A stretch of DNA of 64,000 nucleotides from Piromyces finnis finn (Eukaryota > Fungi > Neocallimastigomycota): assembly GCA_002104945.1 (NCBI GenBank), contig MCFH01000012.1, positions 806,001 through 870,000 on the forward strand, given 5' to 3'. Below, in pieces: positions 1 through 5,813 of this stretch. The translations under genes were made by a program, and so were the position numbers. Numbering within the stretch: the first letter of the stretch is position 1; each line of letters opens with the position of its first letter. The notes under the pieces are model-generated. The model was not told the origin of the DNA and did not search any database. It saw nothing but the letters and a program-made list of their open reading frames with translations.

Positions 1-1179
1 AATTATCAATGAAAATATTAAATAATATAAAAATTAAAAAAAAAAAGGAAAATGCTTTAATGATTATAGTTACTATGAAAGATAGAATGCAAATATACAC
101 AGAATCACATGGTAATGCTAAAAAAGATATAATGAAATTTACAAATGAAGTAGCTGATTCTTTAGGTTTTGAATTTACAGCAGAGTATACATCTGTTTTA
201 TTTTTAGCTGTAAATAGTAGTGAAGTGTTAATGGTTTTCTTAGATGAGGTATGATATATTAATAAATATTTCTTTATAAAAAAAAAATTAAATAAATTAA
301 TCTTTTTTTTTTTTTTGATATTTAAATGATATCATATTAATCTGTTATACAAAATACATCTCTTTTTTCTATTATAGTTATTCTTTTCAATTATTTCTGT
401 TCTGTGTTTATTAATGGTTATTCTTATCTATTCCTTATTAATGACGGATGTTGAAGAAAAAACATTTGAATATGGTATGCTTAGATCATTAGGTTTACAT
501 CATAGTGTCTTAATTATTATTTTATTCTTCCAGGTAAAATAATTTACCTATTTTTTTTTGTTGTTTTTAATTAAAAATATAAAAAAAAAAAACATTTTTT
601 TTTATATTTTCAATGTATCAATTTGTATGTATTATTGCTAATATCATAATTTTAATTTTATTATATAACATGATAGTCTTTATTCTTTTCAATACCAGGT
701 ATTATTCTTGGTGTATTCTTCTGTAAAATCATATATATTCCAGTGGATTATATTATCTCTCAATATGCTGAAACATCAATCAATGTATCCATTACACCAT
801 CAGCCTTAATTCTTGGTATTAGTATTGGTTTCTTTATCCCTGTGTTTGGTATTGTTGGTCTTGTCAAGAGAGCCTTAACCAAAACATTAAGGGATGCTTT
901 GGATATATATCATCATGTTGTGTCAGAAGCTCAAGTTAAAATTCAAAAATTAGAAGATATTGGTATGTCATTATCAGAAATGGCTATTTCAATTATTATG
1001 GTAGCCATTGGTTTTAGTGTATACTATGGTATTCCAACAGCCTATGTCTCACAAAACTTTTCTTTATTCTTCCGATTCCTGACTCTTTTATTATTAAGTA
1101 AGCTTTTTAATTTAATTTTTCATTATAAATTTAAATTATTATTTCTTATCGTACTACTACTACTACTACTAATAGTAAA

Positions 1180-1210
<31 letters not shown>

Positions 1211-3315
1211 TTATTTTTTTTTTATTTTTATTAAATTTTAGTTATGATTCTTGGTGAAACGTTATTAGGACAAGTAATTAATAATATTCTCGAAAAAATT
1301 TGTGTCTCCCTAGTCATCTGGGGATCCAATAAAAAACTAAAAATTATTGTAAAAAAGAATTTGGAAAATCACTTCAGTAGAAATAGTAAAACATCGGTAA
1401 TGTTTTCACTTTGTTTAGCCTATATTATTTTTGCTGCTGCACTTTTTGCATTAATGGGAGGTTCCTTATCAAGACAAATAGAATGGTCAACAGGTGCTGA
1501 TATTTCAATTTATGCAAACGATTTTCAATATCCTCTACCAGAAGAACAAATAAGAAATATTCTTGAAAAGAAATTGTTTATGGAAGATGATGAAAATCTT
1601 ATTGAGGAATATACCTTTGTTACCTTCCCTCTTTCGAATTATGATGCTATTGTAAGTACTGTCATGTGTCCTGTATCCGGTATTACTTCTAAAGGTGTAC
1701 AAATTTACGGAATAGAACCAAACATTTTAAAAACATTACGTACGGATTATTATATGGTAGAAAATTATGATTATAACTATGTTATTGATAATGATCCTAT
1801 CGCCTCCTTAAACCAAACCATTGATCCTCAAAAAGATTATACGCAATATATACCAGAATTATTTGAATCTATTAATAATGGTAAGGTGACAACAAAGAGT
1901 AAAATTTATTATTATTATCCTTTAAATGCCACTCGAACCTATACTAAAGGTTATCCCATGTTAATTGGTAAGAATTATATCACGGACACCTATTCAGAAT
2001 TAGATGAATGGACCCCCTTAGTTATTGATGGTTATGATAATGATATTTCAGAAGTATATTTAATGAAACCAATTTCTGTATTAAATAAGTTCCCTGGTTT
2101 TACAGGTATATCTAATAGTGCATTAAGTAGTGATTATATAGCCTTTATATCCATGGATCATTACAAAGAATTTATCAATAGAACTTATGAATATCTCTAT
2201 GAAGCCTATCCTGCAGCAAAAAATATTAAACGGTATAAAATTCCTGATCTTGCCTATAAGCGTTATTTATTTATAAAAGTATCGGATAAAGCAACAGACT
2301 TCCAAATTGAAGATATTATTAATAATATTTTAAGATATATTGATGATTCCACTAAATATACCGTTAGTAATTTACGTCATTCTGTAAAATCTACTAATAC
2401 CATTGCTGAATTATTAAATAAAATATTTTACTTTAGTAAGTTGATCTTTTTTCATACATCTCTTTTTTTTCCAATATACACAATATACATATAGATAATA
2501 TTTATAATATATAGTACATTTACTATTATAGTTATATTTAATTTAAATCCACGTATAAATTATTTCTAATATTTTCCATTTTACCATTTATATATAATAT
2601 TTAAAAATTTAAAAATTAATTTTTTTCTTTTTTTTCAATATTTAGTCGCTTTCCTCGGAATATTTATGTGCTCATTTATGTGTTACTTATCTTTTACTGC
2701 TAATCTTAAAGAAAATTCATGGGAATTTGGTATTTTACGTTCTATTGGTTTATCGGTAATTTTATTCAACTGTATTAATACATTCCTCCAAATAAATATA
2801 TAAAAAAATATATTATTAACAAAAAAAAAAAAAAAAATATTTACTATTAATTATTTATAGGCAATTGAAGTCATTAATGTATATATCTATGAAGCCATAT
2901 GTATTATTCTTGCTTGTGTAGTTGTTGGAACAATTATTGGTAATTATTAAATTATAATTATATTCAAATAAATTTAGTAAAATCAATAAAATCAAAAAAA
3001 AAAAAAAAAAAAAAAAAAATCTAATTATCATAAAAAAGATTACTTTATAATTTTTAACAATAATAATAATTTTATATATAAAATAAATGTTTATTTTTTT
3101 TTTTTTCATATTATTCCATAATAGGTGTATGTTCTGCTACTATTCTCACAATGCAATTTAATCTCTTTATGCAATTACCATTCACATTATCATTCCCATT
3201 CTATATGTTCTTTGAAATGGTATTCTTATCCTTAATTGTTGCTATTATTGGTTCATATGTTCCTGGTAAACATTATGCTGAAAAACCAATTAATATCGTT
3301 ATTAAAGGAAAATAA
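1..3315 (+). CDS. Twin FtsX/MacB-like (type VII ABC-type) permease, multi-exon, 5' end outside window
   Basis: Phase-consistent GT-AG exons: <1-248, 378-533, 677-1097, 1242-2435, 2646-2755, 2861-2939, 3125-3315 (stop TAA). Two copies of the FtsX-domain signature (EEKTFEYGMLRSLG and KENSWEFGILRSIG), each followed by TM helices, plus a large extracytoplasmic loop (STGADISI...). Confidence 0.8.
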
Positions 3316-4180
3316 TAGATTCTGATAAAAAAAAAAACTCCAAAAAAACAAAAATATATATATAAATAATCTTTATATAAATTAGATAACATTTTTGATA
3401 CTTTTTTTTTTTCTTTATTAAATATATAGTTTTTTTTTTTTTATTCTTATTTTATAATTTCATAAAATCTTTACTCTAAGTTTAAATATATATATATATA
3501 TTTTTTTTTTTTTTGAATTACAATTACTATATATTATAACATAAAAACATAATAAAAATAGAATCAATTTTGAAATTTTGTATCTATTTCTTTTTCATCA
3601 AACTTTATATAACTTTTTTTTTTTGTTTGTTTTCTTATTTTCTTATTACACAAATAGATATAAACACTCAATAATTAAAAAAAAAAAAAAAGTAATTAAA
3701 TAAAAATAAAATATATATAATAATAATTTTTTTATTATTGTTTTATTATTTCTTCTATATTATAATATTGTTTTTTTTTAAAAAAAAAAAAAAAGATTTT
3801 TAATTACATTTATTATTGTTATTATTATTATTATTATTGTTGTTGTTGTTGTTGTTATATTAAAATTGCTTTTACATCTCAATATAATAGTTTACATTTT
3901 TCGTAACTATTATACTTTTCTTTATATTTATAATTTTTGTATTTTAATGTTGAAATGAATTTTGCTTTAGGTATTATCTATATTTATTTTGCTATTAAAT
4001 TTGTATATATATATATATTTTTTTTATAAAATTCATACATTTTATAAAAAGCTTTTTTTTTTTTTTTTAATTATAAGCATTTTTACGTTTTTATATTTTC
4101 TTTTTAAAAAATAAGGGTAAAAAAAAAAAACGTTTTATTTTAATAAATATTCTATGAAAGAAAGAATGAAAAAAATATTT

Positions 4181-5318
4181 TTAATACATTGGACCAATGT
4201 TGTCAAAGTATCTCTTAATTCTATCCTTTACTAAAAATCCAATAGTTTCAATTTGTTCTTCCTTATTTAAATCAGTGGTATTGATGGTGAGAGCTCTCTT
4301 TATTGGGGTAGTTAATTCTTTAAATTTAGTTTCATTTTCCTTTAACTCATTACTAATTTGTTCCTTGGTTTTTTTACCGTTTAATTCTTTGAAACGACGT
4401 TCAACACGAACATTGAAATCTGCCTTTAAATTGAAAATTAAATGAGCATCATCAAAAACGTTCTTTCCAGCAGCTCTACCTTCTAAAAGAGTACAGTAAA
4501 TTTTTGGACTTTTATTTTTAACATCTTCACCTTCCTTTTCTAATTCCTTTCTCATTCTTTCTTCGTTAATATATACAAGTCTTCTTTGTTTGTTTTTCAT
4601 AGCTTCAGTAATTTCTGGAATAGAAAGTGCATTTAAAACATCTTTATCTGGAATTTCACAATCATTAATTTGTTTGGTGACATCCTTGTCATCCATTAAA
4701 ACTTTGTAGGAATCGTCATCTTTTTCATAAATGAAATCAAATTCGGTATTTTTAGCTAATTCACTAATTTTTACAGCATTAGCTGGTGAAACTTCAAGAT
4801 TATTGTATCTACATTTTAAAAGTAACTATAACAATTACATAATACAAATCCAATATTTTTATTATTATTATTATTTAAAGTAGTATATATATATATATAA
4901 ACGTAGTAAGTACAAATTTTTTTTTTTTTTACAATTTAAAAAAAATATTAATGAAATAATTAATATTGACGTTAATAACATTAATTCATTCAATAAAACT
5001 TTTCAAAATAAAAATTTATATATTATTTAAAAGAAAATATAAAGTATATATATATATATAACCTACAGCTCTGTAAATAGCTTGAGAATCAACCCAATTA
5101 AAACCAAGTTTTTTGGAAACACCCTTTGAAATTTCAGATTTACCAGTAGCAGCTGGACCATCAATAACAAAACTAAGTTGGTGAACTGGTGGTAATCTTT
5201 CAGTCTTTGATAAGTAACTCTTTAAAGCAACTAAGCTAACAGTATTTAAATTAAATAATGGATGGAGAGCTAATCTTTGATTTAAAAGAGAAGAAGTGGA
5301 AGATAATAAAGAATTCAT
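4181..5318 (-). CDS. cmk: Bacterial-type cytidylate kinase (Cmk)-fold protein with N-terminal presequence-like extension
   Basis: Exons 5318-5067 and 4825-4181 (donor GTAGGT, acceptor TATAG, phase 0) give ...VIDGPAATGKSEISKGVSKKLGFNWVDSQAIYRA|LLLKC... The P-loop, DS-x-AIYR, QR, EGR..G..VF, RVERR and INTT motifs are colinear with Cmk. The symbol denotes the fold; activity is doubtful (see findings). Confidence 0.8.
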
Positions 5319-5813
5319 TTTTAAATATTATATTGTTATTACTATTCTTTTTTAAGATTGAGTTTATTTCTATATATAGTATTAAAAAATATATATATTA
5401 AAACTATTGATGTTTTATTAATCTTTGCTTTTTTTTTTTTTTTTTGAAAATGAAAAAAACGAAAAAAAAAAAAACGAAAATAACGAAAATTTAATTTATA
5501 ATATATTAAAATTCAATTAAATTTTGATTTTCAATATATTTTTATATATGATCCAATATATTAATTTTAAAATGTTTTTTTCCCTTCATTTGTGGAAGAC
5601 TTTTTTTCTTTTATTTCTTTAAAAAGAATTGTCACTTTTTATTCTTTAAATGTTAAAAGAAAAAAGTATGTTTTATATCTTTTTGCGATTAGAATTAAAA
5701 TTTCATTTTATATTTCATCTTTATATTCATTCCCATTATAATTTATTATTTTTTTCATTAAAAAACTTTTATTTTTTGACACTTAATGTGACAATGTAAC
5801 TGGGAAAAACGAC

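What the first reader, a model, noticed from the sequence alone, without database searches (positions are those of the whole stretch)
4181..5067. Cmk-fold kinase with ATP site intact but CMP-binding site replaced
Seen: the P-loop (GPAATGKS), DS-x-AIYR, the GR arginine and the LID RR are retained. I aligned by eye to the recalled E. coli Cmk sequence. The base- and sugar-recognition residues come out as R110->T (PEITEAM vs PRVREAL), D132->A (EGRAAG vs DGRDMG), and R181->N, D185->F, R188->L (KENETKFKEL vs KERDDRDRNR). There is also a ~22-aa charged insertion between QR and EGR. Inference: this is a kinase for a different, possibly less polar, acceptor or a nucleotide-binding pseudokinase. An automated pipeline would simply call it cytidylate kinase.
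Basis: partly seen in the sequence, partly recalled or inferred. Interest (0 to 1): 0.75.

Follow-up and report, generated by a model that had tools for sequence, protein, structure and literature searches.

The report
Fungal CMP kinase relative, cytidine pocket rebuilt
Anaerobic gut fungi keep, express and conserve a copy of the CMP kinase that other early fungi have, but every residue that grips the cytosine and sugar has been replaced while the ATP and phosphate-handling residues stay, so it probably does some other, still unknown, job.

Summary
A two-exon gene on the minus strand (5318-5067 and 4825-4181; the stated coordinates miss exon 1, which holds the P-loop) encodes the 298-aa Piromyces finnis protein P0001. 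Transcript contigs from three studies are spliced exactly there. An AlphaFold model (pLDDT 87.6) fits E. coli CMP kinase bound to CMP at Z 25.5, 2.1 A rmsd.

HMMER and MAFFT alignments agree that R110, D132, R181, D185 and R188 (E. coli numbering) are all replaced. These five are 97-100% conserved in the 58 bacterial and 18 fungal relatives aligned. The P-loop, R41, R131 and the LID arginines R154/R157/R158 are kept. All eight full-length Neocallimastigomycota orthologues share the replacements (dN/dS 0.2-0.3).

New here:
- The gene is not a private bacterial import. It shares a phase-0 intron and an insertion site with the canonical Cmk of Mucoromycota, Mortierella and Basidiobolus.
- It sits on a very long stem branch (2.8 changes per site).
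- It falls below the curated cmk equivalog cut-off (90 vs 135.6 bits), which other fungi pass (190-229 bits).

Most likely it is a hydrogenosome-directed, repurposed phosphotransferase or ATPase. Its acceptor is unknown.

The parts
5067..5318 (-). Exon 1 (84 codons). Residues 1-44 are a presequence-like N-terminus. It also holds Walker A GPAATGKS (res 54-61, about 5136-5159) and DSQAIYR (res 77-83).
   Evidence: Translation. PF02224 hit at res 52-84. Identical to P0001 1-84. Transcript contigs cover it.
5187..5318 (-). N-terminal extension, residues 1-44. It is rich in Ser/Thr/Leu, has 4 basic residues and 1 acidic one in the first 46, and is absent from bacterial Cmk. It is a putative hydrogenosomal targeting sequence.
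   Evidence: Composition and alignment with short basic N-termini of Spizellomyces, Mortierella-group, Diversispora and Basidiobolus Cmk. AlphaFold pLDDT is below 50 for most of residues 1-24 and 56-66 for 21-40. Localisation itself is not tested.
4826..5066 (-). The single intron, 241 nt, GTAGGT...ATAG, phase 0, after codon 84 (...AIYRA | LLLKC...).
   Evidence: Sequence. Spliced out exactly in contigs of 4 runs. Same position and phase in Anaeromyces and Neocallimastix, and in the canonical Cmk genes of Rhizopus, Basidiobolus and Mortierella.
4181..4825 (-). Exon 2 (214 codons plus stop): NMP-binding domain, insert, GR strand, LID and C-terminal helix.
   Evidence: Translation. PF02224 hit. 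Identical to P0001 85-298.
4602..4622 (-). PEITEAM, residues 154-160. T157 stands where the cytosine-binding Arg (E. coli R110) should be.
   Evidence: HMMER and MAFFT alignments. R110 is Arg in all 130 non-AGF sequences and in all 76.
4506..4574 (-). Lineage-conserved charged insert, about residues 170-192 (INEERMRKELEKEG...). A helix is predicted at 172-181.
   Evidence: Insert length table. Invariant E172, M175-E182. AlphaFold helix 172-181, block pLDDT 82-91.
4464..4484 (-). GRAAGKN, residues 200-206. The phosphate-binding Arg (R131) is kept. D132 is Ala, T135 is Lys and V136 is Asn.
4398..4412 (-). LID arginines RVERR, residues 224-228. R154, R157 and R158 are all kept.
   Evidence: Role of the LID Arg at the beta-phosphates of both nucleotides: PMC7259600.
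4317..4346 (-). KENETKFKEL, residues 246-255. This is the end of the LID helix that should carry R181, D185 and R188. At these three positions it holds no Arg or Asp.

Best explanation
This is the anaerobic-gut-fungus descendant of the bacterial-type CMP kinase (Cmk) that early-diverging fungi carry, often with a short mitochondrial-type presequence. It was inherited vertically.

On the stem leading to Neocallimastigomycota, whose hydrogenosomes have no genome (established knowledge), it changed very fast. All five side chains that read the cytosine and ribose of CMP were replaced (R110T, D132A, and R181, D185 and R188 lost). The kept residues are Walker A, the two arginines that clamp the acceptor's phosphate (R41, R131), the stacking Tyr40 and Ser36, and the three LID arginines. 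Since then it has been under purifying selection, and it is transcribed and correctly spliced.

The most likely reading is a hydrogenosome-directed protein that still binds ATP and probably still transfers or hydrolyses its gamma-phosphate. It no longer takes CMP or dCMP as acceptor. It has either a new phosphorylated, ring-bearing acceptor or an ATP-dependent non-metabolic role. The conserved charged helix inserted next to the acceptor site would then be part of the new function.

Shown: gene model, expression, fold, residue pattern, conservation, shared ancestry with fungal Cmk.
Inferred: organelle location, retained ATP use, loss of CMP activity, link to loss of the organelle genome.
For: - Gene and expression. 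Intronless transcript contigs also exist for Anaeromyces and Neocallimastix.
- Fold: AlphaFold with a 94-sequence alignment gives pLDDT 87.6 and pTM 0.81. The best structural matches are all CMP kinases. E. coli Cmk-CMP 1kdo scores Z 25.5, rmsd 2.1 A over 216 of 223 residues. The next family scores Z 14 or less.
- Residues: of 47 positions conserved in 58 bacterial plus 18 fungal Cmk, the anaerobic fungi keep 29. These include the P-loop, D35, R41, R131, R154, R157 and R158. They change 18, including every base/ribose ligand.
- Ligand roles come from crystal structures (PMC7259600; PMC3603445). Yersinia R110A and R188A are folded but inactive.
- Selection: 85% mean column identity among 8 orthologues. 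dN/dS is 0.20-0.30 between genera.
- Isolation: in a profile search of 1.84 billion representatives, the family scores 607 bits and the next full-length protein 108 bits. TIGR00017 gives 90 and 107 bits against a cut-off of 135.55, while Rhizopus, Spizellomyces, Basidiobolus and Mortierella score 190-229.
- Vertical descent: the phase-0 intron after ...YR[ASC] is shared with Rhizopus, Basidiobolus and Mortierella. The insert site is shared with all 18 fungal Cmk and with almost no bacteria. A tree with anaerobic fungi and other fungi held together has a log-likelihood 17 units higher than the free quick search, with AU p 0.82.
Against: - No biochemical datum exists for any member.
- New polar residues next to the lost ones (Q79, K205, N206) could rebuild a pyrimidine site, so CMP or UMP activity is not excluded.
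- T20E beside the P-loop could weaken ATP binding.
- The extreme AT bias of these genomes inflates divergence in general and disfavours Arg codons. It does not explain why exactly the five phosphate-contacting arginines were spared, nor D132A, which goes against the bias.
- Hydrogenosomal location rests only on the look of the N-terminus.
- The AU test does not prove a clade, and the long stem branch makes the placement uncertain.
- I could not inspect model coordinates. Which residues line the pocket is inferred from alignment, not from geometry.
Confidence: 0.6

Rival explanations
1. It is still a pyrimidine nucleoside-monophosphate kinase (CMP/dCMP, or shifted to UMP). The base pocket has been rebuilt from different residues: Gln79, Lys205 and Asn206 replace Arg110, Asp132 and Arg188.
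For: Ser36, the stacking Tyr40, and the phosphate ligands R41 and R131 are all kept. Three invariant new polar side chains appear at positions next to the lost ligands. R188 is naturally Gln in the active Thermus enzyme, so at least that position tolerates change. The organelle could use a CMP kinase to recycle CMP released by CDP-diacylglycerol-dependent lipid synthesis (established pathway knowledge, not tested here).
Against: R110A and R188A single mutants of Yersinia Cmk show no activity up to 5 mM CMP. Five ligands are changed at once, and a 3-residue deletion follows the LID helix. All 18 other fungi, which do the ordinary job, keep the canonical set. The protein scores below the cmk equivalog cut-off.
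Confidence: 0.2
2. It is a pseudokinase: a nucleotide-binding or purely structural protein that has lost phosphotransfer. It would be kept for a scaffolding or regulatory role, with the conserved charged helix as a protein-binding surface.
For: The acceptor site is dismantled. T20E sits beside the P-loop and the universally conserved K144 is lost. The insert is invariant and highly charged, as expected of an interaction surface. P-loop NMP-kinase folds are known to be reused this way, for example Fap7/hCINAP, which appear among the weaker fold matches.
Against: The Walker A Lys and Ser/Thr, all three LID arginines and both acceptor-phosphate arginines are invariant across genera under purifying selection. 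A protein that no longer handles two phosphates would not be expected to keep them.
Confidence: 0.15
3. The gene is a recent horizontal acquisition from a gut bacterium, and its oddity reflects an unusual bacterial donor family and not change within fungi.
For: A published survey lists a 'cytidylate kinase(-like family)' among bacterial transfers into Neocallimastigomycota (bioRxiv 10.1101/487215). I could not verify that it is this gene. Bacterial and fungal Cmk score alike against the family profile.
Against: No bacterial protein among 1.84 billion representatives comes near it or shares the five substitutions. The intron position and phase are shared with three other fungal phyla or subphyla. 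The insert site is fungal. The constrained fungal clade has the higher likelihood. The gene sits next to the same FtsX-domain neighbour in three genera.
Confidence: 0.05

Closest known systems
Bacterial-type (d)CMP kinase Cmk (PF02224, TIGR00017; E. coli 1KDO/2CMK, Thermus 3AKC)
   Same: Same fold, including the Cmk-specific NMP-domain insert (Z 25.5, rmsd 2.1 A). Walker A, D35, S36, Y40, R41, R131 and the LID residues R154/R157/R158 are kept.
   Different: R110, D132, R181, D185 and R188 are all replaced. T20E, G37Q, T135K, V136N and K144I are fixed. It has a 22-23 residue insert and a 3-residue deletion after the LID helix. It scores below the curated equivalog cut-off and has about 23-28% identity to solved Cmk.
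Canonical Cmk of early-diverging fungi (Rhizopus, Mortierella, Basidiobolus, Glomeromycotina, Calcarisporiella, Spizellomyces) and the microsporidian Encephalitozoon cuniculi Cmk (7L4A)
   Same: Shares the phase-0 intron (Rhizopus, Basidiobolus, Mortierella) and the insert site (all 18 fungi aligned). Several, such as Spizellomyces and the Mortierella group, also have N-terminal basic extensions. 7L4A is the second-best structural match (Z 24.7).
   Different: The 18 fungal sequences aligned keep the full CMP-binding set and pass TIGR00017 at 190-229 bits where tested. Their inserts are variable and low in complexity, whereas the anaerobic-fungus insert is invariant. I did not read the residues of 7L4A.
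P-loop NMP-kinase folds reused for non-nucleotide roles (Fap7/hCINAP)
   Same: A small P-loop kinase fold keeps its ATP site while the canonical acceptor site is not used.
   Different: Only a distant structural resemblance (Z about 13). There is no sequence relationship beyond the P-loop and no evidence of a ribosomal partner. This is an analogy only.

Membership tests
Cmk, bacterial-type (d)CMP kinase (EC 2.7.4.25) | Cmk three-domain fold (CORE, NMP-binding domain with beta-hairpin insert, LID) | tested here: met
   AlphaFold pLDDT 87.6. The 17 best VIA matches and the 21 best Foldseek matches are all CMP kinases, Z 15.9-25.5, with the next family at Z 14 or less.
Cmk, bacterial-type (d)CMP kinase (EC 2.7.4.25) | Pfam PF02224 above gathering score | tested here: met
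   Exon 1 scores 35.4 bits and exon 2 scores 48.9 bits, against a cut-off of 26.
Cmk, bacterial-type (d)CMP kinase (EC 2.7.4.25) | NCBIfam TIGR00017 equivalog cut-off (135.55 bits) | tested here: not met
   P0001 scores 90.3 and the Neocallimastix orthologue 106.7. Four canonical fungal Cmk score 190-229.
Cmk, bacterial-type (d)CMP kinase (EC 2.7.4.25) | Walker A GxxxxGK[ST] and LID arginines (donor site, phosphotransfer) | tested here: met
   G54-S61, R224, R227 and R228 are invariant. Caveat: T20 is Glu.
Cmk, bacterial-type (d)CMP kinase (EC 2.7.4.25) | Acceptor phosphate clamps R41 and R131; stacking Y40 | tested here: met
   R83, R201 and Y82 are invariant.
Cmk, bacterial-type (d)CMP kinase (EC 2.7.4.25) | Cytosine recognition by R110, D132 and R188 (Gln in Thermus), plus S36 | tested here: not met
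   Thr, Ala and Glu/Leu in all anaerobic-fungus sequences. Only S36 is kept. Roles.
Cmk, bacterial-type (d)CMP kinase (EC 2.7.4.25) | Ribose/phosphate contacts of the closing LID helix, R181 and D185 | tested here: not met
   No Arg or Asp at these positions in either alignment register.
Cmk, bacterial-type (d)CMP kinase (EC 2.7.4.25) | ATP:CMP phosphotransferase activity | not testable with these tools
   Needs an enzyme assay or complementation.
Fungal Cmk lineage (descent, not function) | Phase-0 intron after the Y-R-x codon of the D[ST]GxxYR motif | tested here: met
   Present in Piromyces, Anaeromyces, Neocallimastix, Rhizopus, Basidiobolus and Mortierella. Absent in Spizellomyces.
Fungal Cmk lineage (descent, not function) | Insert between the QR helix and the GRD strand | tested here: met
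   This segment is 13-81 residues in 18 fungi and 32-33 in anaerobic fungi. It is 10 in 51 of the 58 bacterial sequences, with one bacterial exception of 24.
Fungal Cmk lineage (descent, not function) | Groups with fungal Cmk in a tree | tested here: inconclusive
   The free quick tree leaves the placement open. The constrained clade has a higher likelihood (+17), AU p 0.82. The stem branch is 2.8 changes per site, so long-branch effects are possible.
Hydrogenosomal matrix proteins of anaerobic fungi | Cleavable N-terminal presequence and organellar location | tested here: inconclusive
   A 44-residue extension that is basic, hydroxylated and almost free of acidic residues, conserved in the genera sampled. 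No predictor or localisation data are available here.

The most novel reading that the evidence does not exclude
After the mitochondrion of anaerobic gut fungi lost its genome, its resident CMP kinase was not discarded. It was converted into an enzyme with a new acceptor: an ATP-dependent kinase for a phosphorylated compound other than CMP. It would work in the hydrogenosome, with the conserved inserted helix forming part of the new site. That would be a new enzymatic activity on the Cmk scaffold, and a dated example of an organelle enzyme being reassigned when its pathway became obsolete.
Probability: 0.4. Interest if true: 0.7.

Novelty: new variant of a known kind. Interest (0 to 1): 0.55.

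Why it matters
Databases name this protein (d)CMP kinase, and metabolic reconstructions of anaerobic gut fungi would inherit that label. The evidence here says the label is probably wrong.

The case is unusually clean. There is a known structure, single-residue mutants show which residues are essential, and sister fungi keep the ordinary enzyme. A phylum-wide version has exactly the substrate-reading half swapped out and the chemistry half preserved under selection. That makes it a tractable target for finding a new acceptor on an NMP-kinase fold.

It also bears on what happens to nucleotide enzymes of a mitochondrion once its genome is gone. Separately, it cautions against calling a gene a horizontal transfer on similarity scores alone, because the intron and the insert show fungal descent.

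Tried and rejected
- A first AlphaFold run with only the 8 close orthologues gave a useless model (pLDDT 49.5). It was replaced by a 94-sequence alignment.
- The word-based protein search found only Neocallimastigomycota. The exhaustive profile search was needed to reach other fungi.
- tblastn could not resolve the short fungal introns. An exact exon-path search replaced it.
I could not measure which residues line the pocket or where the insert lies relative to it.
- I could not establish whether the 'cytidylate kinase(-like family)' transfer in the HGT survey is this gene. The figure and tables are not held, and the journal version is not in the library.
- Literature searches for this protein, for cytidylate kinase in hydrogenosomes, and for the E. 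coli pocket mutants found nothing more specific.
- AT bias was rejected as a sufficient explanation. It cannot account for the selective retention of the five phosphate-contacting arginines, nor for the Asp-to-Ala change.
- Pseudogene was rejected: the frame is intact, the gene is spliced and expressed, and dN/dS is 0.2-0.3.
The exons were searched separately by reference and treated separately in the dN/dS script. Whole-protein work used the database record P0001, which equals the spliced product.

Full report
**Gene model and expression**

The finding lies in a two-exon gene on the minus strand. Exon 1 runs 5318-5067 and starts with ATG. The intron is 5066-4826 (GTAGGT...ATAG, phase 0). Exon 2 runs 4825-4181.

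The two exon translations, 84 and 214 residues, together equal the 298-aa record P0001. NCBI calls it a hypothetical protein of Piromyces finnis, and UniRef calls it '(d)CMP kinase'.

Contigs from four public runs in three studies lie on 4226/4238/4310-4825 and continue without a gap at 5067. The intron is therefore removed exactly as modelled, and the gene is transcribed.

**Checking the observation**

- Both exons hit Pfam PF02224 above the gathering score.
- HMMER alignments to solved CMP kinases reproduce the by-eye alignment: PEITEAM/PRVREAL, EGRAAG/DGRDMG and KENETKFKEL/KERDDRDRNR.
- MAFFT gives the same result, using E. coli cmk taken from the K-12 record. It differs by one residue of register in the last segment. 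In neither register is there Arg or Asp at positions 181, 185 or 188.
- An AlphaFold model built on 94 sequences is confident: pLDDT 87.6, pTM 0.81, with only the first ~40 residues poorly modelled.
- The model superposes on E. coli CMP kinase with CMP (1KDO) at Z 25.5, rmsd 2.1 A over 216 of 223 residues. The 17 best VIA matches and the 21 best Foldseek matches are all CMP kinases. The next family scores Z 14 or less.

**What the replaced residues do**

Crystal structures give the roles (Thermus numbering, with E. coli equivalents from the offsets):
- Ser33 (S36) and Asp127 (D132) bind the cytosine N4.
- Arg107 (R110) binds N3 and O2.
- Gln178 (R188) binds O2.
- Tyr37 (Y40) stacks on the ring.
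- Arg38 (R41) and Arg126 (R131) hold the phosphate.
- Arg171 (R181) and Asp175 (D185) contact phosphate and ribose when the LID closes.
- Lys15, Ser16, Ser17 and the LID Arg153 serve the donor (PMC7259600).

In Yersinia Cmk the R110A, R131A and R188A mutants fold normally but show no activity up to 5 mM CMP (PMC3603445).

The window protein therefore lacks two residues that are individually essential in a canonical enzyme, plus three more ligands. It keeps the phosphate-handling set.

**How unusual it is**

A profile of eight orthologues was searched against 1.84 billion representative proteins. It returned 9081 relatives, but with a gap from 607 bits (its own cluster) to 108 bits.

I aligned 58 bacterial and 18 fungal sequences from those hits. 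Forty-seven positions are conserved in both groups. The anaerobic fungi keep 29 of them:
- Walker A, D35, A38 and R41;
- G130 and R131;
- R154, R157 and R158;
- P192 and L193, among others.

They change 18:
- T20E, G37Q, R92K/N;
- R110T, D132A, T135K, V136N, K144I;
- R181, D185 and R188;
- a 3-residue deletion at A196-D198;
- D203N, and a few others.

In a larger set of 130 non-AGF hits, none lacks more than three of the five CMP ligands. Every anaerobic-fungus sequence lacks all five.

Of the nine conserved arginines, the five kept are exactly those that touch phosphates. This selectivity, and the Asp-to-Ala change, argue against AT mutational bias as the cause.

The curated cmk equivalog model scores the Piromyces and Neocallimastix proteins at 90 and 107 bits, below its 135.55 cut-off. 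Rhizopus, Spizellomyces, Basidiobolus and Mortierella score 190-229.

**Conservation**

The eight full-length orthologues include Piromyces, Anaeromyces, Orpinomyces and Neocallimastix, plus metatranscriptome sequences. They are 70-78% identical to P0001, with 85% mean column identity. Every substitution above is invariant or nearly so.

dN/dS between genera is 0.20-0.30 for both exons. The gene also keeps its neighbour, a large FtsX-domain protein, in Anaeromyces and Neocallimastix, as in the window.

**Origin**

The best non-family hits include Cmk of Rhizopus, Calcarisporiella and Spizellomyces. A search from Rhizopus shows the gene across these groups, all named cytidylate kinase:
- Mucorales and Umbelopsis;
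- Mortierellomycotina;
- Glomeromycotina;
- Basidiobolus;
- Spizellomyces.

Many of these have short basic N-termini that look like mitochondrial presequences.

Three lines tie the anaerobic-fungus gene to this fungal lineage:
- **Intron.** Its only intron, phase 0 after the codon following Tyr-Arg of the D[ST]GxxYR motif, is at the same place and phase in Rhizopus, Basidiobolus and Mortierella. For a single intron to match one of two or three introns among roughly 750 possible positions and phases by chance is a matter of a few per thousand. This is my own estimate.
- **Insert site.** The segment between the QR helix and the GRD strand is 10 residues in 51 of the 58 bacterial sequences, 13-81 in all 18 fungi, and 32-33 in anaerobic fungi.
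- **Tree.** The free quick tree leaves the placement open. A tree with all fungi held together has a log-likelihood 17 units higher, and the AU test does not reject it (p 0.82).

The stem branch is 2.8 changes per site, against 0.2 or less within the group. That means a burst of change followed by constraint.

A published survey lists a 'cytidylate kinase(-like family)' among bacterial transfers into this phylum. I could not check whether it is this gene. If it is, the evidence here disagrees.

**Interpretation**

The pattern is a donor site and phosphotransfer machinery preserved under selection, with an acceptor base/sugar pocket replaced wholesale. This fits a protein that still uses ATP but no longer acts on CMP.

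The pocket is remodelled, not merely stripped. Invariant Gln, Lys and Asn appear next to the lost residues, and a conserved charged helix (residues 172-181) is inserted at the hinge between the NMP domain and the core.

The N-terminal 44 residues are basic, hydroxylated, almost free of acidic residues and poorly structured. This agrees with the separate first-stage note of a hydrogenosomal presequence, but location is untested.

Hydrogenosomes of these fungi have no genome (established knowledge). The ancestral role of an organellar CMP kinase in supplying CDP or dCDP would largely have lapsed. That gives a plausible setting for reassignment, but it is inference.

My estimates:
- 0.6: repurposed phosphotransferase or ATPase that is not a CMP kinase.
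- 0.2: still a pyrimidine NMP kinase with a rebuilt pocket.
- 0.15: catalytically dead pseudokinase.
- 0.05: recent bacterial import.

**Limits**

- There is no biochemical information.
- No model coordinates were available to map the pocket.
- I could not search a complete anaerobic-fungus proteome for a second, canonical Cmk.
- I did not read the residues of the microsporidian Cmk structure.
- The tree is a quick search with a very long branch.

Noticed in passing
window 743-3315, + strand: Several long ORFs (743-1234, 1244-2494, 3151-3315) look like exons of a large membrane protein that converges on the 3' end of the Cmk-like gene. In Anaeromyces (L002) and Neocallimastix (L004) the gene next to the orthologue is an 1125-1207 aa FtsX-domain (PF02687) protein, so the neighbourhood appears conserved across genera. 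An FtsX-type permease is itself an unusual thing in a fungus.
   Followed up: partly
L006:1001-2144 (Spizellomyces punctatus Cmk, P0036): The chytrid orthologue has an 81-residue segment at the fungal insert site, about 70 residues more than bacteria. It lacks the shared phase-0 intron and has only an intron after codon 3. Its catalytic and CMP-binding residues are canonical.
   Followed up: partly
P0016, P0108, P0112 (hits): Three 327-352 aa relatives carry an N-terminal extension of about 100 residues. It begins like an AroH-type chorismate mutase (my recollection of the motif, not tested) and is fused to Cmk. They add to the many known Cmk fusions (PanC, AroA, Der, prephenate dehydrogenase) seen.
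   Followed up: no
window 4592 and 5371: One transcriptome (run X1) differs from the window by G>C at 4592, the third base of codon 162 on the minus strand. It also lacks 2 bases at 5371, in the 5' untranslated region. This is probably strain variation.
   Followed up: no
bioRxiv 10.1101/487215, Fig. 4 item 33 and Fig. S26: A 'cytidylate kinase(-like family)' is listed as a horizontal transfer into Neocallimastigomycota. If that entry is this gene, the shared intron and insert argue for fungal descent instead. If it is a PF13189-type protein, these fungi have a second Cmk-like gene worth comparing.
   Followed up: partly
window 3800-4180 and 5320-5500: The flanks are extremely AT-rich, with long A/T runs and TTA/TTG triplet repeats (for example 3815-3855). 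This is typical of the genome. It limits promoter or terminator inference and biases amino-acid composition.
   Followed up: no
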